64,000 nucleotides of DNA from positions 62,001-126,000 of IMG/VR virus record IMGVR_UViG_3300042319_002138. One strand, written 5' to 3'. A model generated the notes under the pieces. It had not been told where the DNA came from, ran no database searches, and was given only the letters and a program-made list of their open reading frames with translations. Position 1 is the first letter of the stretch. Each line of letters starts with the position of its first letter. A program made the position numbers and the translations under genes. Below, one piece after another: positions 28,232 to 51,559 of this stretch.

Positions 28232-28264
28232 AAAAAAAAAGACCCTTTTGGGTCCCTTTTTTTT
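28232..28264 (-). terminator. Intrinsic terminator after the peptidase gene
   Basis: GACCC-TTTT-GGGTC flanked by A and T runs. Confidence 0.6.
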
Positions 28265-35122: not shown

Positions 35123-38100
35123 ATGCCAAACGCGATAAACCCAAATGATTATAATATAGATTTTTTCGCCACCGATTTTATTGGTGTTACGACAGCAGAA
35201 AGTTTTAGAGATTATCTTTTTAGTAAAAATTTACCTGACTTACCACCTGAATTAATTAACGGTGCGGCAGGTAACTTTAGTAGTGACTATGCTGAAAAAG
35301 GTTTGGAGAAATCCATTAATTATACAAGTATATCGAATCCCGGTGATATTGATGAGTGGTTGGTGGAGGGTAATTTTTCCACTTCACTTCACGAAGTTAG
35401 AGATATTAATTTATTATCAGGTAATAACTATGGGCCACCGACAATCGAGGCCTATAATGAACCAGGTTTAATACCTGAAAACACAGGTTTCTTACAATAC
35501 CCTACTTCTTCAGGTGGAGACGACCTTAAATCAATTTTATTAAGTGACCAATTAGCAGGTTTAGGACCTGGAGCGGCAATTAATTTTCCTTCAGACTTAA
35601 ATGATATTGCGAAAGATAGAAGAAAAGAAGAAGCTATTAATAGACTTAAACTTAAAGCTCAAGATAATATTTTAGGTAAATTAAATTTAGACCCTTTTGG
35701 ATTATTAGCGGGAGAAGATTTAATCCTTAGAGATTATAAAATCACAACAAGACCGACAGTTTTAGGTAAGGTATTTGAATTTTTTAGTGATGCAGCAGAT
35801 GTAACAATACCGAATAGTCCAATACCGTCAGGTGCCTTTGGTTCCTACGGAGATTTAGATAACCCAGTTTCGTATTCCGATTTAATGGACTCTACTGGTT
35901 CTGGTACAAAAACTTTAATCTATAACGCTGTAGCTAGAAATAAATACGGACCTACATTAAGTGAACCAAAAGGTTTCTTAGCAAATACTTTTGGAGCAGG
36001 ACAAGCTGCACAAAAAAATAATTATTTATCACCCGCTAGTACAACATTAGGACAAGCGTTAGGAATTCCTTTAATAGATAAAATAAATCAGGCTGTAGGA
36101 AAAGCGGTTGACGCTTTAAATGGTGGGGTTAATAACGGGGTTGGTATAGAAGGAAATACACCACCCACAGAAACAGAAAACCCATCAATCACATTAGACA
36201 ATATCCAAGAAAACGCACAGGCTGAATTTGATACATTATGGAATGGTCAAAATATAGATACTTGGCAAACACAGGGACCCATAACTAAAATAGAGATACC
36301 TGGTATTGGATTAAGTCTAACTATTCCTGATAATGGACCCGATGGACCTATAGGTACAAAAATACCTATGAATGTTGGTGATGAATTTTACCCAGGAGAA
36401 ATAAATGGTTCTAAAAATAGTGGTATATCTTATGATAGGGGAATGTATTGGGGTAGTCACACCAACAACCCATTTAAAAAAGGTATTTTAAAATACACAC
36501 AAGATTTAATTAATAATTCTAGAAATACAAAAGATTATAAAGATAAAGCAAGATTTGTCGGTGCAACAAACGACGCCTCAAATTTTGATGCAAAAAGTGG
36601 TAGACATAATAATTACTCTATGGGTAACACCGTTACTGATGCAGAAAACAATTTTTATTGTCGTTCTTGGTCTGTAAGAAATCCATACAGAAAAGTTAGT
36701 GATTTAATTAGACACGGAGGTGGTGTTGATTCTTCTGGTAATACAAGAAGTTTAACAAGAGAAGATTTAAATTTAAGTGTATTAGATAATAATGGTTTTG
36801 TTAAAATAGCACCATATGTTGGGGATTTTAAATCTAGAAGTTTCAGCACTGATGGTAGTGAAAATAATTTAGAATCTGGTGTATTAAAATTAGGAAATCC
36901 ACAAATTCAAAAATACATGTTGTCTATTGAAAATTTAGCTTGGCAAAATAGTGAACATATATTACATGTTGCTCCTTGTGAGGTAGGACCTAACGGTGGA
37001 CGTATAATGTGGTTCCCACCCTATGATATTAGTTTTACCGATAACTCTAGTGCCAATTGGGAAGCAACAAGTTTTATTGGTAGAGGTGAACCTGTGTACA
37101 CTTACAATAATACCGAAAGAAGTGGTACCCTTAGTTTTACCTTGATTATTGACCACTCAATGGCAATGACTGAAATAAAACAAAAGGGGGAAGAAGCTTT
37201 ATTTAGATATTTCGCTGGATGTGAAAATCCAATAGAAGCCTTTACGTCAATTGTACCTAAAGCAGTTGAAGATGAAACAAAGGTACAACAAGTTACAGAA
37301 ACAACAACAACTAAAACTGATGTAACTAAAGATAACCCTGAAGTTTGTGACCCTGAACCACCACCAGTAACTAAGTTACAATTTTATTTTAGGAATGCTA
37401 GAAGATTTGAATTAGATTCTGTTGGTACAAACTTAACAACTGAATTAGGTTCTAATGCTGATGAAAAACCACCCAATTATTTATCTCAATATACTAAACT
37501 TTGGCCTAATGGTTATTTAAGAGGTAGTTCAGGTACACCACCACCTACCATACCTAACCCGAATAATCCTGGTCAGTTTATACCTAACCCTGCTTTTACA
37601 TCTAGTACACAAACTGATATAGAAACTTTAAACCAACAAGCTTTAGACAATTTAAATACTTTAGTTGATTTCTTATTAACACCTGACGGTAAAAGATATA
37701 AAATTAAAATTATTGGTAAAACAAGTGATGCAGGACCAACTTCAGGTGGTAAAAGTAATGAAAAATTAGCTCAAAAACGTGCTAATTCAACAAAAGATTA
37801 TTTATTAAACACACTTTACGCTGTAGAAACAGCTGTTGGTGTTGTTAAAGCAGAAAATTTAGGTTCACAAAAAACATACCCAACGGAAAAAGAATGGCGA
37901 GATAGTAATTTAAGATGGGAAGTTTTAGCTGTTGGTGAAACCGATTCTAGTTTATCAGTATCTTATGATGATGGTACTGGACAAAAAACGGAACAAAAAG
38001 ATGATAATAGAACTTTTGGTGATTCACAAACAAGTGTACCACAAGCTATAAGAAATAGAACAACACTAGTTACTTTAGAATATAATAAAGAAATTGATGA

Positions 38101-39496
38101 TACTTTAATTGGTGCGGCACAACCACCAATAACAGAGCAAACAGAACAAACAGTAGTTACTGTTAGAGATGTTGAAACCACAATACCCGCTAGTAAAGAA
38201 AAAATAGAAAGACAACGTGAAGCTGAATTAGCTGCAGCGTTAGCAGCGAAAGCTTCTAGATACATGGCTTGGGAATGTTCTTATTTTGAAAAAATGAAAC
38301 AAGATGATTCATTTATTTATGAAACATTAACACAGAAATTAAAATATTTCCACCCAGCATTTCACTCAATGACACCTGAAGGTTTTAATGCTAGATTAAC
38401 ATTCTTAAAACAATGTACAAGACAAGGACCTAACATTGCTGTAGGTGAACCTAGTAATTTAGCATTTGGTAAACCACCTGTTTGTGTTTTAAGAATTGGT
38501 GATTTTTATCATACCAAAATTATTATAGATTCAGTTAATTTAACTTTTGACCCATTACAATGGGATTTAAATCCTGAAGGTATTGGTGTACAACCAATGT
38601 TATGTAAAGCTGATTTAAGTTTTAAATTTATTGGTGGTTCTTCACTAGGTGGACCTATATCACAATTACAAAATGCAGTAGGATTTAACTTCTTTGCTAA
38701 TACGGCCTTATATAACCCAAGAGTAATTTCTAAATCGGTTGGTAAATATGTAACAAAAAGGGTTGACCCACTTACAGGACAAGAAACTGAATTTACAGTA
38801 CAAACACCTGCAGGAGCTAATGGTTCTATTGAATACGGTGCTTTCATGACACCTAGACAATCAACATCAACAAGTTTATCTAATAATGACTCTAATGGGT
38901 CTACATCAAATTCTAGTACAGATACGGTACCAAATGATAAAGCAAAAGCTACAGCTGATGCACAACAAGCGGACCAACAAGTAGCTGGTAAAGAGGCACA
39001 ATCAACAGTTGCTGAACAAACTAAAGTTGACCAAGAGTTCACTAAAAAAGAAGAAGAAATAGCTGATAGCTCAACAGCAGAAAATGATGGTGTGAAAGGA
39101 AATACATTCCCTGGATTTGATAAAAAGACTGGTGTATATACAATGCAATATACACAAATATTAACATGGAAAAAAGGTGGTGGAACAAATGCCGCACCTG
39201 CCGGTGTTAATAAGTTAAAGGTAGAAAAAGGACAAAAAGTTTATTTACAAACTACCACAAACGGAAAAGAAATTTTTATTGGTGGTTCATTTAAAAACCC
39301 TGATAATAATAAAGTATATAGTACAATAAACAACCCTCTTAGGGTATACTGTAACGGGGATAACGGTTTCAATTTCTTCTTTGTAGAATCATCTGGAAAT
39401 AGTGGTTTTTATACAAACACAGGATTCTATAATGTGGTAAAAAAAGTATTCTGTAAAGGTACTGTACCTAAAACATGGGCTGAATTAACAGCATAA
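35123..39496 (+). CDS. Large baseplate / tube-initiator-like protein with an inserted OmpA-like domain
   Basis: WFPPYDISF…FIGRGEPVYTYNNTERSGTLSF and PPVCVLRIGDF…QPML segments; IKIIGKTS…NEKLAQKRANSTKDYL…RNR is OmpA-like. Confidence 0.6.
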   Translation: MPNAINPNDYNIDFFATDFIGVTTAESFRDYLFSKNLPDLPPELINGAAGNFSSDYAEKGLEKSINYTSISNPGDIDEWLVEGNFSTSLHEVRDINLLSGNNYGPPTIEAYNEPGLIPENTGFLQYPTSSGGDDLKSILLSDQLAGLGPGAAINFPSDLNDIAKDRRKEEAINRLKLKAQDNILGKLNLDPFGLLAGEDLILRDYKITTRPTVLGKVFEFFSDAADVTIPNSPIPSGAFGSYGDLDNPVSYSDLMDSTGSGTKTLIYNAVARNKYGPTLSEPKGFLANTFGAGQAAQKNNYLSPASTTLGQALGIPLIDKINQAVGKAVDALNGGVNNGVGIEGNTPPTETENPSITLDNIQENAQAEFDTLWNGQNIDTWQTQGPITKIEIPGIGLSLTIPDNGPDGPIGTKIPMNVGDEFYPGEINGSKNSGISYDRGMYWGSHTNNPFKKGILKYTQDLINNSRNTKDYKDKARFVGATNDASNFDAKSGRHNNYSMGNTVTDAENNFYCRSWSVRNPYRKVSDLIRHGGGVDSSGNTRSLTREDLNLSVLDNNGFVKIAPYVGDFKSRSFSTDGSENNLESGVLKLGNPQIQKYMLSIENLAWQNSEHILHVAPCEVGPNGGRIMWFPPYDISFTDNSSANWEATSFIGRGEPVYTYNNTERSGTLSFTLIIDHSMAMTEIKQKGEEALFRYFAGCENPIEAFTSIVPKAVEDETKVQQVTETTTTKTDVTKDNPEVCDPEPPPVTKLQFYFRNARRFELDSVGTNLTTELGSNADEKPPNYLSQYTKLWPNGYLRGSSGTPPPTIPNPNNPGQFIPNPAFTSSTQTDIETLNQQALDNLNTLVDFLLTPDGKRYKIKIIGKTSDAGPTSGGKSNEKLAQKRANSTKDYLLNTLYAVETAVGVVKAENLGSQKTYPTEKEWRDSNLRWEVLAVGETDSSLSVSYDDGTGQKTEQKDDNRTFGDSQTSVPQAIRNRTTLVTLEYNKEIDDTLIGAAQPPITEQTEQTVVTVRDVETTIPASKEKIERQREAELAAALAAKASRYMAWECSYFEKMKQDDSFIYETLTQKLKYFHPAFHSMTPEGFNARLTFLKQCTRQGPNIAVGEPSNLAFGKPPVCVLRIGDFYHTKIIIDSVNLTFDPLQWDLNPEGIGVQPMLCKADLSFKFIGGSSLGGPISQLQNAVGFNFFANTALYNPRVISKSVGKYVTKRVDPLTGQETEFTVQTPAGANGSIEYGAFMTPRQSTSTSLSNNDSNGSTSNSSTDTVPNDKAKATADAQQADQQVAGKEAQSTVAEQTKVDQEFTKKEEEIADSSTAENDGVKGNTFPGFDKKTGVYTMQYTQILTWKKGGGTNAAPAGVNKLKVEKGQKVYLQTTTNGKEIFIGGSFKNPDNNKVYSTINNPLRVYCNGDNGFNFFFVESSGNSGFYTNTGFYNVVKKVFCKGTVPKTWAELTA

Positions 39497-39507
39497 AATT
39501 TTAAAAT

Positions 39508-39822
39508 ATGGCAATATACTACGATAGATATAGAGATTTCAGGAAAGACGGTATGGTAACAACCTTACCGTTTATAAAAATACCTGTAAAACCATCAGAC
39601 AAAAGAATTGTTACGGATAATAAAACAAGATTTGATAAAATAAGTCAAACTTATTATGGGAATCCCTTCCATGGTTGGTTGATATTACAAGCTAATCCAG
39701 AATTCGGTGGTTTAGAGTTTGACATTCCTGAAAATACAGTTATAATAGTACCATTTCCTTTAAACAAATCATTAGAGGAATACCAATCTCAAGTAGAGAG
39801 ATATAAAAGATTATACGGATAA
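39508..39822 (+). CDS. LysM-like baseplate protein (gp53 / P2 gpX-like)
   Basis: RFDKISQTYYGNPFHGWLILQANP…IIVP. Confidence 0.75.
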   Translation: MAIYYDRYRDFRKDGMVTTLPFIKIPVKPSDKRIVTDNKTRFDKISQTYYGNPFHGWLILQANPEFGGLEFDIPENTVIIVPFPLNKSLEEYQSQVERYKRLYG

Positions 39823-39836
39823 ATAATAAGTTTTTT

Positions 39837-42800
39837 ATGGCACTTAATCAAGGACCACAACCAAAAGTTCAAGATATGGGTAACGGAATTAGATACGTTG
39901 ACCCAAACCCAACAGATGAAATAGTTAATCACGAAGACTTGGTGATGTATGTAAAACTAGTTGCTAGGTCTAAAGGTAGAAGTATCTTAACATTTGATGA
40001 CGCTAATGACCAAGTTACTAATATTGTAGAACAAAGAAATGTAAAATCAGAAACTAACTTCACATACCCAACAGGTAAAGATAGTATTGATACTAGTTGG
40101 ACTAACATTGGGGGTGGTAACTTAAACTTTGGTGAAGATTTAGGTTCATTTGGTATCACAAATATTAATATAGAATTTAAATCTAGTTTCATGCCACAAA
40201 TTGTAATTGATTTTGTGGATGTTCGTGGAGCAGCTTTATTTGAACAAGGACCCTGTTCACCTTACGCAGTCTTTTTTCACTTACCTTACCCTGTTTTTGA
40301 ATTAACAGTAAAAGGATATTATGGTAGACCAGTTACATACACATTAGCTTTAACTAAATTTAATACAAAATTTAATTCGGACACAGGTAACTTTGAATCG
40401 AAAGCAGAATTTGTGGGTTATACTTATGCATTCTTAGCGGATATCCCTATGGGATATGTTATGGCAGCTGGATTTATGGAAAAACCACATAATGGTAAAG
40501 ATATTTTGGCTGAAAAATGGAAATTATTAATGGATAAAAAAGTTTTGGTTAATAATGTAGAAACACCATTAATAGACCAAACGTCATTCACTGATGCTAC
40601 AAAACCTATAAACGTTTATGATTTAATTAAATCCTCTAAAAAACTAGAATCAAGAACAAGTGAATTAAAAAATTCTACACAAGTAACCAATTTAGGTAAA
40701 ATTAATAAAACCAAAAATGAGTTAAAGGGGTTACGAGAATCAGTTTTAGAATTTAGACAAAAATTTTTAGAAAAAATAGCTAATTCCCCCAATGGTGGGT
40801 ATAGAATTAGTCCCAATACTACAAACCAAAAAAACACATTATATTTAAAATTACCCAACGTTAGTGCATCAGATGATAATCCAGTATTAGTTGAACTTAA
40901 AAAAGTAGTTGAAACTTATTTTGGTACAGGGGAAAACTCTCAATTAGGTGGTACTATAGGTGCAAAATATAATTCCGTAAATAGTTATTACACAAATAAT
41001 GCTATTGATGGACCACCAATACTTTCTTGGGATACAATTAAAACTAATGCTTCTGGATTTTTCGGTACACCAATAAATATAGTTGATGGTTTAAGAGATT
41101 ATTATATTGATATATATGAAAGTTTATTAAAACCTATTGATGTTGCTAGTGTAGAACTTAATAAAAAATATATAATTGAAAAAGATAATACTAAAAATTT
41201 CTTAAACAAAGAAGTTGTGACCACGTTAGGTTTTTTACCTACAATTAGTAATGTTTTTGCTATAATTCTAACAAACGTTGAGGTATTTCTAGAATTACTA
41301 TTAAGAACTTCTCGTGACGCAGAAAAATATCACCAAGAAAATAATGTGAATATTGGCCTAGATAAAACTGGGCTCCAACAAATTTTAGATTTAAAAGGTA
41401 CCCAAAATAATGGTGCTGAATTATCTGATGAAGAGAACGATAAACAAAAAAACAAAGTATATCCTTGGCCAACATATTATGAAAAGAAACAAGGTTCTGA
41501 TAGTGAAGTTGGGGATAAAGAAACATACCCAGGGGAAAATCCCGAATTTGTTAGTTGGCCTGAAGTAATATTTGTTGAATCGTTTATTAAAGCTTTAACA
41601 AAATTAAAAGGTGAATTAGCTGTTTTAGAATTACAATTAGAAAATTTACCTGGTTATGATAATTTTGCCCCAATCACACCCTACGAAACTCACGCATTTG
41701 GTGTAGTAGAATCACCAAATAGATGGTTAAAAATACAAAACGGTAGTAGTGACCAAGCTTCTTGGGCTGATTCAATCTATAAAGTAATGGGTGAAAATGC
41801 TTTTATTATTGGTGACTACACTATGATTAATAGTTTAAGTGTTTGGAAATCACAATTAGGTTTTAAAAATGGTTGGGGTGTAGAAACATTAACTAATGGT
41901 AATGGGGCTAGTAATGGATATTCTAACACTGGTAATAAGTATTCTATTAAACCACAAAGATTAGCAGAAAACCCAAAAGTATTACAAAATATTGCTGCAA
42001 ATAACCAATTAGGTAGATATGGTGGTGAAGGATTTACCTACGGTTCACAAGGGAAAGATACAGATTCTTTTAAAAGAAAAATAGTTCCCGCTACCACAAA
42101 AAGAATGAAAGATTGGGGTTATGTTGATGCTTTAAATTTGATGACAACCCTTAAATTAGATGGCGGGGTAAATACGACCCTAGAATGGTTACAAAATGAT
42201 ATTACAACAGCAAAGAAAGATTTTATTATAACAGAAATAAAAAGAGTTTTAACCAATAAACTTAAAACACAAAAATTTGATGAGTGGAAAGTTTCGGCTA
42301 CCGCGGCTATTGGTGGTACACCAGCTCTTGTAGATAAACAATCACAAATATGGAATAGCTATTTCCAATACGTTACAGCTAAAAATGTATTAACACTAAC
42401 AGGCCCAATTTATTTAAATGATAGGGTTGATAGTGCTAAAGATATAAAAATATCAGCAAACCCACATAATAATGACGGAAGTGGAGCTGTTTTAGTAAAA
42501 GACACTGATTTAACAGCAAGAGAAATAGATTTTAGTAGTGATTCATTAATAGAAGAAATTAAAAATGGTTATAAAAAATATTATGCTAGTACTGAAGAAA
42601 CTGATAGTGGTATAGCCGAAAATCTTTTAGAAGTTGGTTCTTTAGCGTATAGATTATTAAAATTCAGGCCAAAAACACCTAGGGACAAACCAACTACCGC
42701 TTATGATACAAAAAAAGTGATAGAGACAGAGGCTGACATAAATTTAAGTAGAGATAAAAATACAAATATGCTTACTTTAGGTGATTATTTTGCACCTAAT

Positions 42801-45014
42801 TTTTATCATACATATGAAAACCTAAAAGACCTACCACAAGAGGGACCAATATTAGATTTAAGTTCATCGAGAACAATTTATGACAGTTATTCTCCAAAAT
42901 ATATATTTTGGTCTAATTTTATGGGTGCCTCAAATACTAATACTTCTGTTGGTTCCGCGGATTCAATAATAAACACACCACTATGGTTACTTAATTATCC
43001 TTTATGGAAAAATTCTTGGCAATACGCTGAGTCTGGTGGTGATAACGGTACCGTGGCTCTTGATGAAGTAGTTTCAATAGTGGCTGGTAAAACTTCTGGT
43101 GAATTTGCTACTTACCTTGGAGAAGATATTGGTACATACCCATCTTACCATAATAAAGCTGATTCAAACCAAAGAAGAAATTGGTCTACTTGGTGGGGAT
43201 TAAATCAGTGGGGTGTAGATAATACTAATAATATATACAAACCATTGGCTTATATGGCGGTAATGTCATTTGGTTTTGATAATTTAAAATCTGAATTTAG
43301 AACAGGACATTTTCCACCTTGGGATGGCAATAGTGATACAGATTTATCATCATTTTCTAATTTCACAACTTCAGCTATTATGGCATATCCACCTAAAGCT
43401 TATATATTATTAATTGGAGCCATTTTATGGAGAATGAAAGAAACTAATTTATTATTATGGGACGAAATAAAACCTACAAAAGACCCTTTTCCTTATGACG
43501 CTAGTATAAATTCAGGGTGGAATAGATTAAATAAATCATACCTTTCTGACAATTCAAATATAGGTATAGATGACATAAACGACCCTGTATGGTTTTTCCA
43601 TACATCTACGTCTAGACCTTGGTTTAAAGGTGGTTCTGTATACGCAATAAAACCAGAACAAAATGCTTTATCTTTTGGTGGTACAAATTCTAGTTATCAA
43701 AGAAGATGGTTAGGTGCCCAAGGGGGTGTAGATAGATGGACCAATGGTGGAGCATCCATAAGTAAAAATTTTGGAACTCAAAAACCAGTAATTATCGGAC
43801 CTAATAACAGTATTAATTTTCCTCCTGGTTTATCTGCTTCTGATTTTAACTTTACAAATTCATTATATCGAGCCGGATGGACTAAATCAAGTTCTATTTT
43901 TGGTAAAAATGATGATAAAGTCCCTAGTAATGGTATATTTAGAAGTGCTGTAGGTAATATTACCAAAGGATGGTTTGACCAATGTAGACCCGACCAAATG
44001 CCTTTTATTTTAAGTGATAGTGGTAGAGGTATTGATTTTACAAGTCCTAAAACATTGGTTATTACTAATCTAAGTACTGAAACAAATAAGAATATCAATT
44101 ACAGTGATAAGACACCTAATTTATTAAATAATAAATACCCTATTTTAAAAGAAGAATGTAAAGAATTAATGTTTATACCAAAAAGTTTAAAAATACAATT
44201 TATTGATGCTTTTGAATCTTGGGCAACAGGTGAAAATGCTAGATGGTTATTAGGCTTAGACCCATTAAATTGGAATGATAATGGTAGTTTAGATAATTGG
44301 TCAACAACAAGTGGTGGTTTTGATAATTCATATGTTTTAAATGGGTATAAAGGATTTTTAACTCAGACTGTTAGAAAAGATAGACAGTATTTAACATACA
44401 CCAAAGAAGATAAGAAAAATTACTATACACAACGTTTTACTTTTCTTGATGAGGGTGAATTATCTGGCACAAAACCAAAACCAAAAAAACAAAAGAAAAG
44501 TAATAGTAATACTGATTACGAACCAGCATCACCTACTTATGATGTTTCATGTTTTGTGGCTGGTTCTAAAATTAAGTTAAGTAGTGGTAAAAATATTAAT
44601 ATTGAAGATTTAGTAGTTGGTGATATTGTATTAAGTTATAATGTAAATACAAATATTTTTGAAGAAAGTAGTATTGAAAACGTTACAATAAATTATAAAG
44701 ATAATCTTGTAATTTACAATTTTGATAACGGAATTAAAATAACTTGTACCGATACCCACCCTATTTGGGTTGTTGGTAAAGGTTGGTCTTCTTATAGACA
44801 AACTGATGTAAATGATTCTGAACATATAGGACCCACAAAACAAATTAGTAGTGGTGATGAATGTTTTTATTATTCTAACAATAAATTTAATAAAGTTAAA
44901 ATTTCTAAAATAATTGAAAAACAAAATAAAATGGTTAGGGTTTGGAACGTTAAAAACGTTACTGGTAACCATAACTTCATCATAAATAATGTTTTAGTAC
45001 ATAACGTTACATAA
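39837..45014 (+). CDS. Giant baseplate hub-like protein (N-terminal part) ending in a Hint domain
   Basis: Follows the LysM gene; FGITNINIEF…FVDVRG…PYPVFELTVKGYYG hub-like N-terminus; C-terminal Hint. Confidence 0.7.
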   Translation: MALNQGPQPKVQDMGNGIRYVDPNPTDEIVNHEDLVMYVKLVARSKGRSILTFDDANDQVTNIVEQRNVKSETNFTYPTGKDSIDTSWTNIGGGNLNFGEDLGSFGITNINIEFKSSFMPQIVIDFVDVRGAALFEQGPCSPYAVFFHLPYPVFELTVKGYYGRPVTYTLALTKFNTKFNSDTGNFESKAEFVGYTYAFLADIPMGYVMAAGFMEKPHNGKDILAEKWKLLMDKKVLVNNVETPLIDQTSFTDATKPINVYDLIKSSKKLESRTSELKNSTQVTNLGKINKTKNELKGLRESVLEFRQKFLEKIANSPNGGYRISPNTTNQKNTLYLKLPNVSASDDNPVLVELKKVVETYFGTGENSQLGGTIGAKYNSVNSYYTNNAIDGPPILSWDTIKTNASGFFGTPINIVDGLRDYYIDIYESLLKPIDVASVELNKKYIIEKDNTKNFLNKEVVTTLGFLPTISNVFAIILTNVEVFLELLLRTSRDAEKYHQENNVNIGLDKTGLQQILDLKGTQNNGAELSDEENDKQKNKVYPWPTYYEKKQGSDSEVGDKETYPGENPEFVSWPEVIFVESFIKALTKLKGELAVLELQLENLPGYDNFAPITPYETHAFGVVESPNRWLKIQNGSSDQASWADSIYKVMGENAFIIGDYTMINSLSVWKSQLGFKNGWGVETLTNGNGASNGYSNTGNKYSIKPQRLAENPKVLQNIAANNQLGRYGGEGFTYGSQGKDTDSFKRKIVPATTKRMKDWGYVDALNLMTTLKLDGGVNTTLEWLQNDITTAKKDFIITEIKRVLTNKLKTQKFDEWKVSATAAIGGTPALVDKQSQIWNSYFQYVTAKNVLTLTGPIYLNDRVDSAKDIKISANPHNNDGSGAVLVKDTDLTAREIDFSSDSLIEEIKNGYKKYYASTEETDSGIAENLLEVGSLAYRLLKFRPKTPRDKPTTAYDTKKVIETEADINLSRDKNTNMLTLGDYFAPNFYHTYENLKDLPQEGPILDLSSSRTIYDSYSPKYIFWSNFMGASNTNTSVGSADSIINTPLWLLNYPLWKNSWQYAESGGDNGTVALDEVVSIVAGKTSGEFATYLGEDIGTYPSYHNKADSNQRRNWSTWWGLNQWGVDNTNNIYKPLAYMAVMSFGFDNLKSEFRTGHFPPWDGNSDTDLSSFSNFTTSAIMAYPPKAYILLIGAILWRMKETNLLLWDEIKPTKDPFPYDASINSGWNRLNKSYLSDNSNIGIDDINDPVWFFHTSTSRPWFKGGSVYAIKPEQNALSFGGTNSSYQRRWLGAQGGVDRWTNGGASISKNFGTQKPVIIGPNNSINFPPGLSASDFNFTNSLYRAGWTKSSSIFGKNDDKVPSNGIFRSAVGNITKGWFDQCRPDQMPFILSDSGRGIDFTSPKTLVITNLSTETNKNINYSDKTPNLLNNKYPILKEECKELMFIPKSLKIQFIDAFESWATGENARWLLGLDPLNWNDNGSLDNWSTTSGGFDNSYVLNGYKGFLTQTVRKDRQYLTYTKEDKKNYYTQRFTFLDEGELSGTKPKPKKQKKSNSNTDYEPASPTYDVSCFVAGSKIKLSSGKNINIEDLVVGDIVLSYNVNTNIFEESSIENVTINYKDNLVIYNFDNGIKITCTDTHPIWVVGKGWSSYRQTDVNDSEHIGPTKQISSGDECFYYSNNKFNKVKISKIIEKQNKMVRVWNVKNVTGNHNFIINNVLVHNVT
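44550..45005 (+). other. Intein-like Hint domain (residues 1572-1723), no endonuclease, followed only by Val-Thr-stop
   Basis: Block A CFVAGSKI, IEDLVVGDIVLS, block B ITCTDTHPIWV, blocks F/G VWNVKNVTGNHNFIINNVLVHN. Confidence 0.92.
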
Positions 45015-46942
45015 TGAGTGATAACACAAGATTAGTAGGATTAAAAAAAGATAAAAACAAAGAACTGTATGAAGAATTATTTGTAACTGATTCTAAATAC
45101 CGTTTAATTTCTTCATCACCTAAAGTTTTTTCTGCCATACATCCTGATGATTTTAATGAAGAATTTTATATATCTGAGGATGAATTAAGTTCATACGTCG
45201 ACGGATTTATTCAAGCGGTGTCAGACAATTCCAAAAAAATTATTGAGTCAATTACACAAAATACGGATAATAACGATAATATAGCTGATTCCGCTTTAAA
45301 TGACACAGACCTAAAACTTTCTTTATATCGTTCATTTAAATCACTTTACGATAAATGGATTTCTTGTTCTGTAATTGGTTCAGATAGTACTTCGGGTAAT
45401 ACTTCAGGTTATTTCTATAATAACTATGGTAGTAGTAGTCCATCTGAAACAAGGATGTTATATGAACATTTTAGTTTTGTTAATAGAGGTAATGGTGATG
45501 TGGGTAAAAAAGCAGTTATAGATTTTTCATACCTTTCTAATTTAGCTAGTACCAAAAACGGACAAGGGCCAACACAATCCCTATACGAATCTATAACTAA
45601 TTTATTAACAAAAAACAATTTTGAATTTTTTGCAATGCCAAACGTAATTGGGTATTCTACAGGGGGCAATGAAGTTCTTGAAAATATTTTTAGAGCTTTC
45701 GATAGTCCTATAGATAGAATACCCGCTAAACCTGGATTTGTGTGTATGTTTATTGGGGGTAATTCTAGGACATTAGATATACCAAAAACTTCATGTAGTA
45801 ATAATGGTATTAATTTTGATTATGTAGACGATACCTTTGATATAGATAAACCCACTACATACCCAGAAGATTTTATTAAAAATGGTGGTATAACAGCTTT
45901 TAAAGTTAGATACGGACAACAAACCCAAAATCATTTTAAATCTTTAGAACTAGACCAATCCGAATTTAAAGAAACTCAAGAATCACTTTTGGTAATTGAT
46001 GCCTTAACAAATCCTAGTAGTGGCTCAGACCCAACACAAATTGGTAAGGGTAATAATATTTATGATATGTATTTGACAAGAAACTATTCTTGTACTGTTA
46101 ACACATTTGGTAACATGCAAATACAACCAATGATGGTCTTTAAATTAGAGAACGTCCCAATGTATAAAGGAACTTATTTAATTACAAACGTCAGTCATTC
46201 CATAAAACCACACAATGTAGAAACAACATTTAAAGGTGTGAGACAACCAATAGTCACCGTACCTATTGTAACAGAAGCTTTGAGTTTGATTGACCTAGCT
46301 CTAGCTGAAACACTACAAGGAGATGCTGCTTTAGGTAACACTGGTGGGGGAGGTGGAGGAACCACAACTACAACTACAATATTACCAGCCAACCAAATAT
46401 TCATAGACGATACTGTTTATGGAGATAGTTCAAATGAACAATGCCCTAAAATAGACGGTATAACAGATGGTGGTGTTGGTGACGCTTATACCGGTGGTAA
46501 ATTATTTAAAATTAGGTTATGTAAGGTAAAAGGTGCACTTATAAACGTCAAAATGGCGGAAAATTTAAATAATATGGTTAATGCCGCACAAGCGGATGGT
46601 GTACCATTAACTTGTGGTAGTAACTTTAGAACAATGGAAGACCAAATAAATACGGCTAAAGCTAATGGGTGTTATAAAACAGGTGTTTATGTAAAAGGTA
46701 ATTGTGACCCTGATACTGCCACACCAGGGAGGTCAAGACACCAAAGTGGATTTGCAATAGATTTTGGTTGTAATGGGTCGACAATTTGTTATAAACACGA
46801 TTCAGCTTGGTGTGCCGCAAATGGTGCTTCTAAAAAACCAAACGAATATGTTTGTTTTAATTGGTTGGTTAATAACGCCTCAAAATACGGATTTATTAAT
46901 TACAACGGTGAGGCTTGGCACTGGTCAATAGATGGTACATAA
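45014..46942 (+). CDS. Hub C-terminal cassette 1: shared core plus M15 (VanY-like) peptidase tip
   Basis: TAATG overlap with the Hint gene; core GNMQIQP…GTYLITNVSHSI…TTFKGVR; tip FRTMEDQ, PGRSRHQSGFAIDF, EAWHW. Confidence 0.8.
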   Translation: MSDNTRLVGLKKDKNKELYEELFVTDSKYRLISSSPKVFSAIHPDDFNEEFYISEDELSSYVDGFIQAVSDNSKKIIESITQNTDNNDNIADSALNDTDLKLSLYRSFKSLYDKWISCSVIGSDSTSGNTSGYFYNNYGSSSPSETRMLYEHFSFVNRGNGDVGKKAVIDFSYLSNLASTKNGQGPTQSLYESITNLLTKNNFEFFAMPNVIGYSTGGNEVLENIFRAFDSPIDRIPAKPGFVCMFIGGNSRTLDIPKTSCSNNGINFDYVDDTFDIDKPTTYPEDFIKNGGITAFKVRYGQQTQNHFKSLELDQSEFKETQESLLVIDALTNPSSGSDPTQIGKGNNIYDMYLTRNYSCTVNTFGNMQIQPMMVFKLENVPMYKGTYLITNVSHSIKPHNVETTFKGVRQPIVTVPIVTEALSLIDLALAETLQGDAALGNTGGGGGGTTTTTTILPANQIFIDDTVYGDSSNEQCPKIDGITDGGVGDAYTGGKLFKIRLCKVKGALINVKMAENLNNMVNAAQADGVPLTCGSNFRTMEDQINTAKANGCYKTGVYVKGNCDPDTATPGRSRHQSGFAIDFGCNGSTICYKHDSAWCAANGASKKPNEYVCFNWLVNNASKYGFINYNGEAWHWSIDGT

Positions 46943-46996
46943 AATATTATGGGTGATAAAAAAAATTAATAGGATTAAAAAAATAAGATAAAAATA

Positions 46997-48982
46997 ATGA
47001 GTGATAACACAAGATTAGTAGGATTAAAAAAAGATAAAAATGATGAACTGTACAAAGAATTATTTGTAACTGATTCTAAATACCGTTTAATTTCTTCATC
47101 ACCTAAAGTTTTTAGTGCAATTCACCCTGAAGATTTTGGAGAAGATTTTTATATTTCAGAGGATGAACTAGGTTCTTATATTGATGGATTTATTCAAGCG
47201 GTGACCGATAACTCTCAAAAAATCATTGATTCCATCACACAAAATACAGATAATAACGATAATATAGCTGATTCTGCTTTAAATGACACAGACCTAAAAC
47301 TTTCTTTATATCGCTCATTTAAATCTCTTTACGATAAATGGATTTCTAGTTCAGAATATAACCAACAACAAACATCTAATTATTTTTATAATGCATATTC
47401 AGCAGAAAAAACTGACGAAAGAATGTTATACGAACATTTTAATTTTGTTAATAGATGTGGTACTGACATAGGTAAAAAGGCTGTTATAGATTTTGCTTAC
47501 CTTTCTAATTTAGCTAGTACCAAAAATGGGCAAGGACCTACACAATCACTATACGAATCTATAACTGGAGTTTTAAGTAAAAATAATTTTAATTTCTTAC
47601 CATTACCTGGGTATATTAAATATTCAGACGCAAATACAAGTGAATTAGAAGATATGTTTAGAGCTTTTGATGGTCCACTAACTAAAATGAGAGCAAACCC
47701 TAAATTTGTGTGTATGTTTATTGGTGGTAGTTCTAGAAGTTTAGATATACCTAGGTCTTATTGTGGTACTAACGGAACTAATTTTGAATATAAAGATGAT
47801 TCTTTTGACATATTTGACCCAACCACTTACCCCCAAGATTTTAATAACGATAAAACAAGTGGTATTGTGGCTTTTAAAGTTAGATACGGACAAGAAACCC
47901 AAAACCACTTTATTAAAGTGGAGTTAGACCAAGCTGAGTTTAGGGAAACACAAGATTCACTTTTGGTAATTGACGCTTTGGTAAACCCAAGTAGTGGTTC
48001 GGACCCAACACAAATTGGTAAGGGTAATAATTTATATGATGTTAACTTAACTAGAGGTTACACTTGTAAGGTTGAGACTTTGGGTAACATGCAAATACAA
48101 CCCACAATGTTTTTTAAATTAGAAAATATCCCAATGTTTAGAGGTACTTATCTAATTACAGATGTATCACACACAATCGTACCACATAACGCTAAAACAA
48201 CTTTTACAGCAACAAGACAACCAATAATTACGGTACCAATTGTGACCGAAGCTTTGAGTATATTAGATTTATCTTTAGTTGAAACAGTACAAGGAGACAC
48301 GAATTTAAATAACACTGGAGGTGGAGGAACCACAACAACCACAACAACTGATAATAATTATGACGAATCTACAGTAACAACATTCAGTGGAATTGATGAT
48401 TGTGTAACAACTTCTTTAAATAGTGTTAAAAATGATGGGTCCTTCCCAGTAATCATAAAAGGATGTTATACGGCTAAAGATTTAGGTGGAGACGCCTTAC
48501 ACTCTTTTAATACTAGAAAAAGTGATAATTTTGGTGGTTATATGTTTACTGAATCAGCAGTACCAGCTAATTTTAGTAATAGAGTTAAAGTTGGTACACA
48601 GGGTGGAGTTTATGCTGGAAAAGGTGTTAACACTGTAATAAAAGAAATAAATAGTAAGGGTGTTAAAGTAAAAGTTTCAAAAATAGAAATTAATATAGAT
48701 TGGACTAATTATTTTGTTAGTTGGGCAGTTACAATAGAAAAAAGTACTGACGAAAAATCTTACATTGGAGTAGCTACTAGAGGTTCAATAGGTAGTATAT
48801 CTTCTGGAAACTATTCAGACAGAGCAGATTCACAAATACCGACATTAAAAAGCCAAAACCCAGAATACGCAAATTGGGTTTCACCAAAAATTATTTATAA
48901 TAAAAATATAATGGCAACTGGTTATTTAGAAGACCCTAAAAAACAATTAAGACAATATTTTTTAGCTTATACAAAAGCTTAA
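46997..48982 (+). CDS. Hub C-terminal cassette 2: shared core plus unknown tip domain
   Basis: Same MSDNTRLVGLKKDKN start and ~435-aa core; GGGGTTTTTT linker; unrecognised ~200-aa tip (DALHSF…). Confidence 0.75.
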   Translation: MSDNTRLVGLKKDKNDELYKELFVTDSKYRLISSSPKVFSAIHPEDFGEDFYISEDELGSYIDGFIQAVTDNSQKIIDSITQNTDNNDNIADSALNDTDLKLSLYRSFKSLYDKWISSSEYNQQQTSNYFYNAYSAEKTDERMLYEHFNFVNRCGTDIGKKAVIDFAYLSNLASTKNGQGPTQSLYESITGVLSKNNFNFLPLPGYIKYSDANTSELEDMFRAFDGPLTKMRANPKFVCMFIGGSSRSLDIPRSYCGTNGTNFEYKDDSFDIFDPTTYPQDFNNDKTSGIVAFKVRYGQETQNHFIKVELDQAEFRETQDSLLVIDALVNPSSGSDPTQIGKGNNLYDVNLTRGYTCKVETLGNMQIQPTMFFKLENIPMFRGTYLITDVSHTIVPHNAKTTFTATRQPIITVPIVTEALSILDLSLVETVQGDTNLNNTGGGGTTTTTTTDNNYDESTVTTFSGIDDCVTTSLNSVKNDGSFPVIIKGCYTAKDLGGDALHSFNTRKSDNFGGYMFTESAVPANFSNRVKVGTQGGVYAGKGVNTVIKEINSKGVKVKVSKIEINIDWTNYFVSWAVTIEKSTDEKSYIGVATRGSIGSISSGNYSDRADSQIPTLKSQNPEYANWVSPKIIYNKNIMATGYLEDPKKQLRQYFLAYTKA

Positions 48983-49021
48983 TTATACTATCTGTTTTAG
49001 TTAAAAAAATAATAAAGTAAT

Positions 49022-51559
49022 ATGAGTGATAACACAAGATTAGTAGGATTAAAAAAAGATAAAAACAAAGAACTGTATGAAGAATTATTTGTAACTGATT
49101 CTAAATATAGGCTCATATCTTCTTCACCTAAAGTTTTTTCTGCTATTCACCCCGAAGATTTTGGTGAAGATTTTTATATATCTGAGGATGAATTAAGTTC
49201 TTATGTTGATGGGTTTATTCAAGCGGTGACAGACAATTCCAAAAAAATTATTGAATCAATTACACAAAATACAAATAATAACTCTATTGAGGATAACATG
49301 TCAAGTGACCCAGATGTTAAACTTTCATTATATCGTTCATTTAAATCATTTTATGATAAATGGGTATCTAATTCTTATGATAGTGTAAATAAATCTTCTG
49401 GTTATTTCTTTAATAATTACGGTGAAGAAGATGATAGAATGTTATATGAACATTTTAAATTTATTAATAGAGCAAATCAAGACGTGGGTAAAAAAGCAGT
49501 TATAGACTTTTCATACCTTTCTAATTTAGCTAGTACCAAAAACGGACAAGGGCCAACACAATCACTATATGAGTCATTGACAAGTTTATTAAGTAAAAAC
49601 AATTTTGATTTTTGGCCATTACCAGCAAACATTGATTTATCAACAGTATCATTAACAAATGAACAAGTAAAAGATATTTTTAGACCATTAACATTTATAG
49701 ATAAGGTACATCCAGGACCATCATTTGTTTGTGTTCATATTGGGGGTAGTTCTAGGTCTCTAGCTGATTTAAAAGACAATAGTAATACTTGTAGTGTTAA
49801 TGGTGGTAATTTTGAATATGTTGATGACTCTTTTGATATTACAAATACAGTAGATTTACCGGTTGAATACACTAAAGAAGGTGAGGGTTTAGTTGTTTTT
49901 AAAGTTAGATATGGGCAAGAAGCACAAAATCATTTTAACTCAATAGAGTTAGACCAAACAGAATTTAAAGAAACACAAGAATCTTTACAAATAATAGATG
50001 CCTTAACAAATCCTAATAGTGGCTCAAACCCATCACAAATTGGTAAAGGTAATAACATGTATGATGTTTATTTAACAAGGGCTTATAATTGTACGGTTTC
50101 AGGTTTGGGTAATATGTCAATACAACCTTTAATGTATTTTAAATTAGAAAACGTACCAATGTTTAGAGGTACTTATCTAATTAATGCCGTTAGCCATACA
50201 ATAACAAATAATAAAATTACTACTGAATTTACTGGTATGAGACAACCCAAAGTAACCGTACCTGTTGTAACTGAAGCTTTGAGTTTAATTGATTTAGCTT
50301 TAGTTGAAGTAGTACAAACTGATACAACTACCACTAATACTAATGGTAATGGAAGTACTACTGATAGTGGTGATTATAGTGGTGGTGATATTTCAGTATT
50401 TAATAGTGTTGATACAAACGCTAAAGGTTGTGAGATTATAGGAAGACTTAAGGGTGATTTGGGTATAACTGATGCACAGGCCGCTGGTATTATTGGTAAT
50501 TTAATTGCTGAATCAGGTTTAATACCTGATAGAATACAAGATAGAAAAGGGAGAAAACCAAGGGGACTTATAACAGAATCTGGTGGATGGAATGGAACTA
50601 CATTTTCTAAAGGTGGGGAAGATGAAGAAGGTTATGGTTGGGCACAATGGACTTTCTATACATTAAAAAATGATTTTATAGAATATGCAAGTACTAAAGG
50701 TTTTGATTTAAAAACAAAACCAGCAACAGATGAAATTAATTATGGTTATTTAATATATTGGTTAACTGTATCAGAAGGTGGTAAAAAATTTGAAAAATTT
50801 AAAAGTGAAGATACAGTTTATAAAGCAGCAAAATATGTTGCTCAAAAATGGGAAAGATGTGAATTTTGTCAAACAGAGGCTGAATGGAAAAAAAGAAGTG
50901 CTTTTGCACAAAACGTGTTTGATAGTTGTGGTAAAACACCAACTGGTGGGGGTGGTACAGGAAAACCACCAGAACCAAAAAATTGTAGTAGTTCTGTTAA
51001 ATTTGGTCTTAATGGTGGTGGTACTTTAGCTAACGCTAAAAACGCTATTGTTGGTTCTTCAAGTGTTGGGACCCTTAATGGTATGAGTAAATCTAGTACT
51101 TACGGTAACTTAACTAGTAATAATATATACGTATACTATAACTGTGGTGGTAAAACACTCTCTTGGTTAAAACAACAAATTAATGGAGACGGTAATGTTT
51201 ACACAAGTGTAGAATCATTCTTCCAAGTAGGTATTGGTACTAATGACGGGTATCCAACAAAGGATAGTACCAAGAAAGATATTAAAGCATATACTGATTT
51301 GGTTAGAAAAAAATTCCCTAACGCTACATTATATATTTTACCTGGTACTCGTGGTTGGGGAAGTGTTTCTAATACTACACTTAGTCAAATGAAATCTTAT
51401 TATAAACAATATACAGATTTAGGTTGGACTTTATTGTGGCCTTTAAATAGTTCTAGTAATGAAATAGACCCTTATTTTGACACACAAACAAAAGCTCACA
51501 ACAGTAATGATGAATGGTTTAAAAAACAAATGAAAAGAATCAAAGATAATAAGAGTTAA
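49022..51559 (+). CDS. Hub C-terminal cassette 3: shared core plus phage-tail lysozyme and SGNH-like domain
   Basis: AQAAGIIGNLIAESGL…GYGWAQWT (phage tail lysozyme-like); VGSSS, GGKT, GIGTNDG and a late His (SGNH-like). Confidence 0.75.
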   Translation: MSDNTRLVGLKKDKNKELYEELFVTDSKYRLISSSPKVFSAIHPEDFGEDFYISEDELSSYVDGFIQAVTDNSKKIIESITQNTNNNSIEDNMSSDPDVKLSLYRSFKSFYDKWVSNSYDSVNKSSGYFFNNYGEEDDRMLYEHFKFINRANQDVGKKAVIDFSYLSNLASTKNGQGPTQSLYESLTSLLSKNNFDFWPLPANIDLSTVSLTNEQVKDIFRPLTFIDKVHPGPSFVCVHIGGSSRSLADLKDNSNTCSVNGGNFEYVDDSFDITNTVDLPVEYTKEGEGLVVFKVRYGQEAQNHFNSIELDQTEFKETQESLQIIDALTNPNSGSNPSQIGKGNNMYDVYLTRAYNCTVSGLGNMSIQPLMYFKLENVPMFRGTYLINAVSHTITNNKITTEFTGMRQPKVTVPVVTEALSLIDLALVEVVQTDTTTTNTNGNGSTTDSGDYSGGDISVFNSVDTNAKGCEIIGRLKGDLGITDAQAAGIIGNLIAESGLIPDRIQDRKGRKPRGLITESGGWNGTTFSKGGEDEEGYGWAQWTFYTLKNDFIEYASTKGFDLKTKPATDEINYGYLIYWLTVSEGGKKFEKFKSEDTVYKAAKYVAQKWERCEFCQTEAEWKKRSAFAQNVFDSCGKTPTGGGGTGKPPEPKNCSSSVKFGLNGGGTLANAKNAIVGSSSVGTLNGMSKSSTYGNLTSNNIYVYYNCGGKTLSWLKQQINGDGNVYTSVESFFQVGIGTNDGYPTKDSTKKDIKAYTDLVRKKFPNATLYILPGTRGWGSVSNTTLSQMKSYYKQYTDLGWTLLWPLNSSSNEIDPYFDTQTKAHNSNDEWFKKQMKRIKDNKS

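What the first reader, a model, noticed from the sequence alone, without database searches (positions are those of the whole stretch)
39837..51559. Candidate Hint-mediated trans-ligation system: one hub protein, three interchangeable enzymatic C-terminal cassettes
Seen: the 1725-aa hub-like protein ends in a complete endonuclease-free Hint domain (Cys1572, TxxH, terminal His-Asn) followed only by Val-Thr-stop, so there is no Cys/Ser/Thr +1 nucleophile and no real C-extein. The next ORF overlaps by TAATG. It and two further paralogs all start Met-Ser-Asp-Asn-Thr, carry what looks like the missing C-terminal part of a hub protein (GNxxIQP…GTYLIT.VSH.I…T.F.G.R) and end in different tips. Established: Hint domains form a thioester at Cys1 that an external nucleophile can resolve (cholesterol in Hedgehog), and methionine aminopeptidase removes Met before Ser. 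Inference: the exposed N-terminal Ser of each cassette acts as the +1 residue in trans, joining hub residues 1-1571 to any of three tips. That would be combinatorial protein splicing without a split intein. From memory, related phages encode both parts as one ORF; I could not verify this. A simpler alternative is Hint self-cleavage followed by non-covalent assembly.
Basis: partly seen in the sequence, partly recalled or inferred. Interest (0 to 1): 0.95.

Follow-up and report, generated by a model that had tools for sequence, protein, structure and literature searches.

The report
Split phage baseplate hub ending in Hint
An uncultured large T4-like phage has broken its giant baseplate hub and cell-wall-lysin protein into a common front part, which ends in a self-processing Hint domain, and three swappable enzyme-bearing back parts; comparison with relatives favours self-cleavage plus non-covalent docking over the proposed protein ligation.

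Summary
The 1725-aa ORF ends in a complete Hint (Cys1572, TDTH1638-1641, His1722-Asn1723) followed by Val-Thr-TAA. Three paralogs starting MSDNT follow it. More distant relatives encode both parts in one ORF of 1600-2900 aa, and the break maps exactly to the Hint position. Ser2 is not conserved: residue 2 is Ala, Ser or Gly, unrelated to Hint presence. At least five lineages are split at the same site with no Hint at all. Three or more of them are nested inside the Hint-bearing clade, so the Hint was lost repeatedly. Within the Hints, Cys1 (or Ser) and the block-B His are conserved while the terminal Asn decays. This Hint belongs to a large BIL-like family with non-nucleophilic +1 residues, not to classical inteins. 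Best reading: a split baseplate hub/tail lysin whose front part sheds its Hint by N-terminal cleavage. One to three lysin modules dock non-covalently through a shared adaptor that is nearly identical among the modules of one genome. Amine-based ligation, as in Tetrahymena BIL2, remains possible (about 15%).

The parts
35123..39496 (+). Context: conserved upstream 1457-aa tail protein with an OmpA-like peptidoglycan-binding domain (possible tape measure; function inferred).
   Evidence: Pfam OmpA hit, 8.9e-7. A gene of 1323-1471 aa sits at the same place in L001-L004, L052 and L053.
39508..39822 (+). Context: conserved 104-aa gene directly upstream of the hub, weakly similar to a baseplate wedge subunit.
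   Evidence: phrog_7145, E 4e-4. A 104-106 aa gene occupies this position in all related loci.
39837..44471 (+). Hub N-part, residues 1-1545. The N-terminal beta-rich domain (about residues 100-200) has a tail-tube/gp27-like fold. The rest is helical or unassigned.
   Evidence: ORF. There are 478 homologs. AF2 model mean pLDDT 68.7. Foldseek local matches, probability 0.92-0.99, to PhiTE baseplate 9cuy_X, T4 gp27 (2z6b_D, 1k28_D) and VgrG, and in BFVD to tail lysins and baseplate proteins; all PDB E-values are above 1e-3.
44472..44549 (+). Low-complexity Lys/Pro/Ser/Asn linker (residues 1546-1571) ending at the -1 residue Ser1571.
   Evidence: Translation. Comparable variable linkers precede Cys1 in all Hint-bearing homologs.
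44550..45005 (+). Hint domain, residues 1572-1723: Cys1572, TDTH 1638-1641, blocks F/G ...NHNFIINNVLVHN, no endonuclease.
   Evidence: tblastn gives 29% identity to mini-inteins in Vibrio phage helicases.
45006..45014 (+). Val-Thr-TAA tail. The TAA overlaps the ATG of cassette 1 (TAATG).
45014..46942 (+). Cassette 1 (642 aa). Adaptor, about residues 1-105. Conserved core to about residue 430, containing GNMQIQP...GTYLITNVSH. Gly/Thr linker 441-456. VanY/M15 peptidase 510-637.
   Evidence: The AF2 model is confident only for the VanY domain.
46997..48982 (+). Cassette 2 (661 aa): same adaptor and core. The C-terminal ~210 residues have no recognisable family.
49022..51559 (+). Cassette 3 (845 aa): same adaptor and core, Phage_lysozyme2 at residues 474-634, then about 200 unassigned residues.

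Best explanation
The locus encodes a baseplate hub/tail-associated lysin of an uncultured contractile-tailed, T4-like phage (contigs 163-226 kb). In this clade the protein has undergone gene fission in a variable linker. The front part (residues 1-1571) carries the N-terminal tube/gp27-like domain. The back part has been duplicated into one to three paralogs. Each paralog has an adaptor that is nearly identical among the modules of one genome, a conserved core, a Gly/Thr linker and a different cell-wall hydrolase tip. The Hint at the end of the front part is a BIL-like autoprocessing domain. It makes a thioester at Ser1571|Cys1572 and removes itself by N-terminal cleavage (hydrolysis or thiolysis). 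That leaves the same kind of free C-terminal linker that Hint-less relatives encode directly. The modules then dock non-covalently on the front part. Because gp27-like hubs and Tal proteins are trimers, up to three different tips could sit on one virion. Shown: the split, the fused relatives, the exact junction, Hint-less split relatives, and the pattern of residue conservation. Inferred: self-cleavage, non-covalent docking, and trimer stoichiometry.
For: Fused single-ORF relatives, with the junction lying between the '[FY]YG..(D/N)' motif and the 'R-h-G-h-[KR]' motif. Hubs in L004, L013, L035, L036, L049 and L052 end at that same point with TAA and no Hint, with -1 to 66 nt before the cassette ATG and no room for a hidden Hint. 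In the tree of the N-terminal 900 aa, fused forms are basal and split forms make one clade (support 99). The Hint is present in the earliest branch of a 29-row clade, and Hint-less lineages are nested at three or more places. Among Hints, position 1 is Cys (Ser in two lineages) and the block-B His is invariant. The final His-Asn is replaced by HS, HT, VS, TT, VK or HQ in about 8 lineages, and the tails after it are 0-22 aa with no conserved nucleophile. The first ~100 aa of the three window cassettes are 87-100% identical in protein and 83-97% in DNA, against 40-80% further on. In L013 and L037 the enzyme tip is itself a separate ORF after a tip-less cassette, with no Hint. Myovirus context: sheath, tube and T4_baseplate genes. 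Tail-lysin/hub fold matches. Trimeric Tal with a gp27-like N-domain and a proteolytically removed lysin is an established precedent (PMC11409707).
Against: There is no biochemical or proteomic evidence for cleavage. If the Hint only removes itself, its long retention is unexplained, since a nonsense mutation would delete it. The Hint has also been exchanged between lineages and replaced by a very different Vint-type Hint in P0014, which hints at a positive function. Its closest characterised relative, BIL2, transfers its N-flank to amines of other proteins. All full-length cassettes have a small residue 2, so Met should be removed, against 55% of other window genes. The hub identity rests on weak fold matches (no PDB E-value at or below 1e-3). 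The cassette core could not be modelled (pLDDT below 50) and has no Pfam or PDB profile match.
Confidence: 0.55

Rival explanations
1. Amine-based trans-ligation. The Hint thioester is resolved by the free alpha-amine of the cassette's small N-terminal residue (after Met removal) or by a nearby lysine. This rejoins the N-part covalently to any of the modules. Hint-less lineages have given this up.
For: The nearest solved relative is BIL2 of Tetrahymena BUBL1. It forms an isopeptide bond between its N-flank and lysines of other proteins (PMC8616854). From memory, Dassa et al. 2004 proposed aminolysis by a free alpha-amine for an A-type BIL with Ala at +1; this paper was not readable here. Residue 2 is always small. 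A long flexible linker precedes Cys1. The Hint has been retained, exchanged and replaced at this site.
Against: The Hint was lost three or more times while the split was kept. A small residue 2 is equally universal in Hint-less loci. No lysine is conserved at a fixed position. The distance from the N-terminus to the conserved motif varies from 3 to 17 residues in both classes. There is no direct evidence.
Confidence: 0.15
2. One reading: Ser2, exposed by methionine aminopeptidase, acts as the +1 nucleophile, followed by an O-to-N acyl shift. This would be combinatorial splicing.
For: The window and its closest relatives (L002, L009) do combine a complete Hint with cassettes starting Met-Ser.
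Against: Ser2 is not conserved: A 28, S 24, G 13. L037 has the identical ...VLVHNVT* ending but cassettes starting MGNYL, L003 has MANARL and L040/L043 have MGNA. Hint-less splits exist at the same site.
Confidence: 0.04
3. Hog-like transfer. The thioester is resolved by a non-protein nucleophile (lipid, sugar or peptidoglycan amine), tagging the hub's C-terminus.
For: Hint domains at the extreme C-terminus are common in this Hint family (68 of 143 top representatives). Hedgehog gives a precedent for adduct formation (PMC7765530).
Against: No adduct-recognition region follows the Hint; only 0-22 non-conserved residues do. Hint-less relatives function without it.
Confidence: 0.07
4. The Hint is not processed. 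It stays on the virion protein as a decoration, or is an inert relic.
For: The terminal Asn decays and the Hint is dispensable in several lineages.
Against: Cys1 (or Ser) and the block-B His are retained in all Hint-bearing lineages over 37-94% hub identity. In the wider family, 257 of 259 complete Hints start with Cys.
Confidence: 0.1
5. Artefact or recoding. The two ORFs are really one (sequencing error, frameshift, readthrough or stop-codon reassignment), and the Hint is an ordinary intein.
For: The TAATG overlap occurs in the window and L002. In L003, L009, L040 and L043 the two ORFs are in the same frame, separated by one stop.
Against: All 19 hub genes examined end in TAA, several followed by further stops. 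Frame relations and spacing (-4 to 66 nt) vary. Four IMG/VR contigs are 100% identical to the window. The +1 residue is Val. Cassettes 2 and 3 cannot be reached by any recoding.
Confidence: 0.02

Closest known systems
Bacterial intein-like (BIL) domains, including BIL2 of Tetrahymena thermophila BUBL1 (PDB 6Y75/6TMM)
   Same: A small Hint without endonuclease: Cys1, block-B His, His-Asn end, non-nucleophilic +1 residue. It sits in a variable linker, not in a conserved site of a housekeeping enzyme. BIL2 is the best solved-structure match. The wider family shows the same HN-Lys ends, and one member is followed by ubiquitin.
   Different: Here the Hint is the last domain of a phage virion protein and sits exactly at a gene-fission point. 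No ubiquitin-like flank is present. Activity is untested.
Classical and naturally split inteins (e.g. cyanobacterial DnaE; 'fractured genes', PMC2677866)
   Same: A host protein encoded in two ORFs with Hint sequence at the break. The Hint is 29% identical to mini-inteins in Vibrio phage helicases.
   Different: All splicing blocks, including F and G, lie on the first ORF. The second ORF has no IntC and starts directly with sequence that is contiguous in fused homologs. The +1 residue is not a nucleophile. The terminal Asn is not conserved. There are three alternative partners.
Hedgehog/Hog C-terminal autoprocessing domains
   Same: The Hint is at the C-terminal end of the precursor and is released while the N-terminal product is kept.
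   Different: There is no sterol/adduct recognition region. The final Asn is present in the window copy.
Tail-associated lysin (Tal) and gp27-like baseplate hubs (TP901-1/Tuc2009 Tal, T4 gp27-gp5, Herelleviridae tail lysins)
   Same: An N-terminal gp27/tube-like domain, C-terminal peptidoglycan hydrolases, a Gly-rich linker before the enzyme, post-translational separation of the lysin part, and a baseplate gene neighbourhood.
   Different: The protein is far larger (1600-2900 aa when fused). Separation is genetic (stop plus start) rather than proteolytic. Several paralogous lysin modules exist. A Hint is present.
Polymorphic toxins with a pretoxin Hint (PT-HINT) and downstream alternative tips
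   Same: A Hint just before a variable C-terminal payload, and an array of alternative payloads downstream with a shared 5' region.
   Different: The payloads are complete, separately translated genes. The hub ORF contains none of the module. No immunity genes are present. The payloads are lysins of a virion.

Membership tests
HINT superfamily | Block A nucleophile at position 1 | tested here: met
   Cys1572. Position 1 is Cys, or Ser in two lineages, in all orthologs.
HINT superfamily | Block B TxxH | tested here: met
   TDTH at 1638-1641. The His is invariant in 12 of 12 and 18 of 18 aligned orthologs.
HINT superfamily | Significant match to Hint models or solved structures | tested here: met
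   Pfam Intein_splicing 1.4e-6 and Hint 2.9e-5, both below their curated cut-offs, and AXH above its cut-off. BIL2 E about 9e-5. A profile search finds 16150 Hint proteins.
Classical (class 1) intein | Embedded in one ORF between N- and C-extein | tested here: not met
   Only Val-Thr-stop follows the Hint.
Classical (class 1) intein | Cys/Ser/Thr at +1 | tested here: not met
   The +1 residue is Val. Orthologs have T, M, K, A, V, S or nothing.
Classical (class 1) intein | Conserved terminal Asn (or Gln/Asp) | tested here: inconclusive
   Present in the window and its close relatives. Absent in about 8 lineages.
Naturally split intein | IntC (blocks F/G) at the start of the second ORF | tested here: not met
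   Blocks F and G are on the hub. Cassette residues from about 6 onward align with contiguous sequence of fused homologs.
BIL (A-type-like) domain | His-Asn end with a non-nucleophilic C'-flank, in a variable region of a non-housekeeping protein | tested here: met
   The family description is taken from PMC7765530. No BIL-specific model was available.
BIL (A-type-like) domain | Autocleavage or ligation activity | not testable with these tools
   Needs expression and mass spectrometry.
Hog (Hedgehog-type) domain | Adduct/sterol recognition region after the Hint | tested here: not met
   Two residues follow the Hint.
Baseplate hub / tail-associated lysin | gp27/tube-like N-terminal domain | tested here: inconclusive
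   Foldseek probability 0.92-0.99 over about 170 columns to T4 gp27, the PhiTE hub and VgrG, but E is above 1e-3. BFVD matches to tail lysins have E 3e-3 to 2e-2.
Baseplate hub / tail-associated lysin | Peptidoglycan hydrolase domain(s) | tested here: met
   VanY 2e-13 and Phage_lysozyme2 2.4e-20. Homologs carry M23, Amidase_2, GH24 and M74 domains.
Baseplate hub / tail-associated lysin | Located in the tail/baseplate module of a tailed phage | tested here: met
   Sheath, tube and T4_baseplate genes lie upstream.
Polymorphic toxin with PT-HINT | Payload fused after the Hint in the main ORF, orphan tips without their own starts, and immunity genes | tested here: not met

The most novel reading that the evidence does not exclude
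A BIL-type Hint at the C-terminus of a phage hub protein works as a ligase that acts only once. Its thioester is captured by the free N-terminal amine (or a lysine) of whichever lysin module docks. This rebuilds, after translation, the covalent chain that relatives encode as one ORF, and lets one hub gene be joined to up to three different enzymatic tips. It would be natural 'expressed protein ligation' in virion assembly.
Probability: 0.15. Interest if true: 0.9.

Novelty: new variant of a known kind. Interest (0 to 1): 0.6.

Why it matters
Hint domains are known as inteins, Hedgehog processing domains and poorly understood bacterial BIL domains. A Hint sitting exactly at a gene-fission point of a phage baseplate protein appears not to be described; this rests on literature searches and on the absence of any GenBank phage relative. 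The same site exists in nature in three states: fused, split with a Hint, and split without a Hint. That makes the locus a clean natural experiment on what a terminal Hint contributes. It is also easy to test by co-expression in E. coli. If the Hint only cleaves, the locus shows a route by which self-processing domains accompany gene fission and modular diversification of virion lysins. If it ligates, it is a new natural protein-ligation system with obvious uses as a tool. Separately, the Hint profile search uncovered a very large family of tandem and C-terminal 'VHN-K-stop' Hints that deserves its own study.

Tried and rejected
- **Sequencing error, frameshift, readthrough or stop-codon recoding.** Rejected. 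All hub genes end in TAA, with variable frame and spacing. Four IMG/VR contigs are identical to the window.
- **Split intein.** Rejected. There is no IntC on the cassettes.
- **Search for a fused hub gene with an internal Hint** (an ancestral intein state). None was found among the 120 listed homologs, in the Hint-region search (3 hits), or among the top 150 Hint representatives, where only 5 hub fragments appeared. This is not exhaustive.
- **Identity of the cassette core as a gp27/gpD domain.** No answer. The AF2 model was poor (pLDDT below 50). The profile search against PDB found nothing. Pfam found nothing across 32 members. hhalign of A1 against A2 only re-found the fused members.
- **Relatives in public collections.** GenBank phages have no relative of the hub or cassette, even at E up to 1. 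Representative bacterial and archaeal genomes have none.
- **Promoter and terminator scan.** Counts do not exceed chance, and there is no + strand terminator between the four genes.
- **Rhs protein ending in a Hint (P0313).** Its neighbour is a small membrane protein, not a payload, so it is not a parallel case.

Full report
**1. Observation.** The 1725-aa protein has Cys at residue 1572, TDTH at 1638-1641, and His1722-Asn1723 followed by Val-Thr-TAA. The stop overlaps the next start as TAATG. Its last 152 residues match Pfam AXH, Intein_splicing and Hint. They also match, at 29% identity, mini-inteins in Vibrio phage helicases. Among solved structures, the best match is BIL2 of Tetrahymena BUBL1 (6Y75/6TMM, E about 9e-5). 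The three downstream proteins all begin MSDNTRLVGLKKDKN and share a ~430-aa N-domain. Their tips are a VanY/M15 peptidase, an unassigned domain, and Phage_lysozyme2 plus about 200 unassigned residues. So 'enzymatic' is verified for two of the three.

**2. What the locus belongs to.**
- The window is a contractile-tailed phage. Tail sheath (17597-20389), gp19-like tube (27212-27700) and a T4_baseplate/hub-subunit gene (29458-30219) lie upstream.
- gp32, a UvsX-like recombinase, a 5'-3' exonuclease and a DnaB-like helicase lie downstream.
- Identical copies sit on IMG/VR contigs of 163-226 kb.
- No GenBank phage has a detectable relative of the hub or of the cassette N-domain, even at E up to 1. 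Representative prokaryotic genomes have none either.
- An AF2 model of hub residues 1-830 (mean pLDDT 68.7) gives weak but thematically consistent Foldseek matches for its N-terminal beta domain. These are the PhiTE baseplate, T4 gp27, the phiCD508 needle, VgrG, AFP and tail-tube proteins, at probability 0.92-0.99 but E above 1e-3. In BFVD the matches are tail lysins and baseplate proteins of SPO1-like, Listeria and Lactobacillus phages.
- 'Baseplate hub/tail-associated lysin' is therefore the best label, with moderate support. The cassette core itself could not be assigned.

**3. Fused relatives and the junction.**
- The hub has 478 homologs in metagenomes.
- P0028 (1839 aa, one ORF) aligns with the hub over its residues 14-1134 and with cassette 1 over 1165-1780 (E 3e-110).
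- About 90 further homologs of 1600-2900 aa have the hub N-terminus and the cassette core in one ORF, and none has a Hint. hhalign confirms this (probability 100, E 5e-109).
- In the fused proteins, a '[FY]YG..(D/N)' motif is followed within a few residues by 'R-h-G-h-[KR]-N-G'.
- In split phages the first motif ends the N-part, and the second is the cassette's 'RLVGLKK'. The break, and the Hint, lie exactly between the two motifs.

**4. Tests of the trans-ligation idea.**
- *Ser2.* Among 79 stand-alone cassettes, residue 2 is A 28, S 24, G 13, V 3, T 2, P 1. Hubs with an intact His-Asn end pair with MS, MA or MG cassettes. L037 has the very same ...VLVHNVT* ending as the window, yet its cassettes start MGNYL.
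- *Hint-less splits.* L004, L013, L035, L036, L049 and L052 end their N-part at the same motif with TAA. The cassette ATG follows within -1 to 66 nt, which leaves no room for a Hint.
- *Phylogeny.* On a tree of the N-terminal 900 residues, fused forms are basal and split forms make one clade (support 99). The Hint is present in the earliest branch (P0023) of a 29-row clade. Hint-less lineages are nested at three or more places. The Hint was therefore lost repeatedly while the split stayed.
- *Residue conservation.* Cys1 (Ser in two lineages) and the block-B His are kept throughout. The terminal His-Asn is replaced in about 8 lineages, and the tails after it vary from 0 to 22 residues. Only the N-terminal, thioester-forming chemistry is under selection.
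- *Recoding.* It is excluded. All hub genes end in TAA, and frame and spacing vary.

**5. How the modules attach.**
- The first ~100 residues of the three window cassettes are 87-100% identical in protein and 83-97% in DNA. The rest of the N-domain is 40-80% identical, and the tips are unrelated. The same holds in other genomes.
- This region differs between genomes.
- That pattern fits a docking adaptor that is homogenised within a genome and co-adapted to its own N-part (inference).
- Copy number is 1 (L052, L053), 2 or 3, and never more in the loci seen. This fits a trimeric hub (inference; Tal is trimeric, PMC11409707).
- In L013 and L037 the tip itself is a separate CHAP-like ORF after a tip-less cassette. 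Non-covalent modularity is therefore common in this clade.

**6. What kind of Hint it is.**
- A profile of the hub Hints finds 16150 proteins at E up to 1e-3.
- Among the top 143, 257 of 259 complete Hints start with Cys. Most end VHN, AHN or THN, and the next residue is usually Lys.
- 88 of these proteins carry two or more tandem Hints, and 68 end within 6 residues after a Hint.
- One is followed by ubiquitin, as in BUBL proteins. One is an Rhs-repeat protein.
- This is a BIL-like family (description in PMC7765530), not classical inteins.
- The Hint tree disagrees with the hub tree. P0007's Hint is 75% identical to the window's although the hubs are 48% identical. P0002's Hint is 52% identical although the hubs are 70% identical.
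- P0014 carries a quite different Vint-type Hint at the same place. The module has therefore been exchanged and replaced.

**7. Verdict on mechanism.**
- *Best supported (about 0.55).* The Hint removes itself by N-terminal cleavage and the modules dock non-covalently.
- *A possible history (inference).* A BIL-type Hint in the linker first cut the protein post-translationally. That made genetic fission and module duplication tolerable. The terminal Asn then became useless and decayed, and the Hint was eventually lost in several lines. No fused gene with an internal Hint was found to support this.
- *Not excluded (about 0.15).* The thioester is captured by the cassette's free N-terminal amine or by a lysine, as BIL2 does with lysines (PMC8616854). 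In favour are the universal small residue 2 (against 55% of other window genes) and the retention and replacement of the Hint. Against are its repeated loss and the same small residue 2 in Hint-less loci.
- *The Ser(+1) version* is unlikely (about 0.04).

**8. Novelty.** This is a new variant of known kinds: a BIL/Hog-like terminal Hint combined with a tail-associated lysin/hub. The combination seems undescribed: a Hint at a gene-fission point of a virion protein, with up to three paralogous lysin modules. Literature searches found nothing similar. The question can be settled by a simple co-expression experiment.

Noticed in passing
window 44550-45005; P0238, P0253, P0231 and others: Pfam's AXH model (Ataxin-1/HBP1 module) scores above its curated cut-off on these Hint domains (36.9 against 33 bits in the window, up to 83.8 bits in relatives). 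The Hint and intein models stay below their cut-offs. This is an annotation trap.
   Followed up: partly
P0200-P0346: There is a very large family (16150 hits) of small Hints with Cys1, a VHN end and Lys at +1. They often occur as 2-7 tandem copies, and often as the last domain of the protein (...VHNK-stop). It includes a recurrent ~750-790-aa architecture with two terminal Hints. Function unknown.
   Followed up: partly
P0205 residues 577-736: A Hint of this family is followed directly by a ubiquitin sequence, the BUBL-like arrangement known from ciliates.
   Followed up: no
L054 3674-9210: An Rhs-type protein (DUF6443 plus RHS repeats) ends in this Hint (...VHNRYN-stop) with no toxin domain after it. 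The next ORF is a 118-aa membrane protein.
   Followed up: partly
L037 11449-12378; L013 7365-8306: In several relatives the first cassette lacks an enzyme tip. It is followed by a separate 309-313-aa ORF with a CHAP-like Cys...His motif. This is a second gene fission, at the core/tip boundary.
   Followed up: partly
window 46334-46381, 48320-48360, and homologs: Gly/Thr-rich linkers (runs of G followed by runs of T) separate the cassette core from the tip. They resemble the Gly-rich proteolytic processing motif of lactococcal Tal (PMC11409707).
   Followed up: no
L003 4812-9826: This relative's hub gene is interrupted. The 1416-aa ORF and a 139-aa Hint ORF overlap in different frames, so there is a frameshift or an assembly error.
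   Followed up: no
L003, L009, L040, L043 hub/cassette junctions: In four relatives the hub and the first cassette are in the same frame, separated by a single TAA and 0-2 codons. In the others the frames differ.
   Followed up: yes
window 39719-39746: A perfect sigma-70 consensus (TTGACA, 16 nt, TATAAT) lies inside the 104-aa gene, about 90 nt upstream of the hub start. The overall promoter-like count is at chance level.
   Followed up: no
window 7351-7446 (-): ARAGORN calls a 96-nt tRNA-Tyr inside a 524-aa ORF on the same strand (6825-8399). It is unusually long and oddly placed.
   Followed up: no
window 28263-29279 (-): A peptidase gene (phrog_4191; weak M28/M42 Pfam hits) lies on the opposite strand, between the tail tube and baseplate genes.
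   Followed up: no
window 45014-45330, 46997-47310, 49022-49330: The 5' ~300 nt of the three cassettes are 83-97% identical in DNA, with few synonymous differences. This suggests gene conversion between paralogs, not purifying selection alone.
   Followed up: partly
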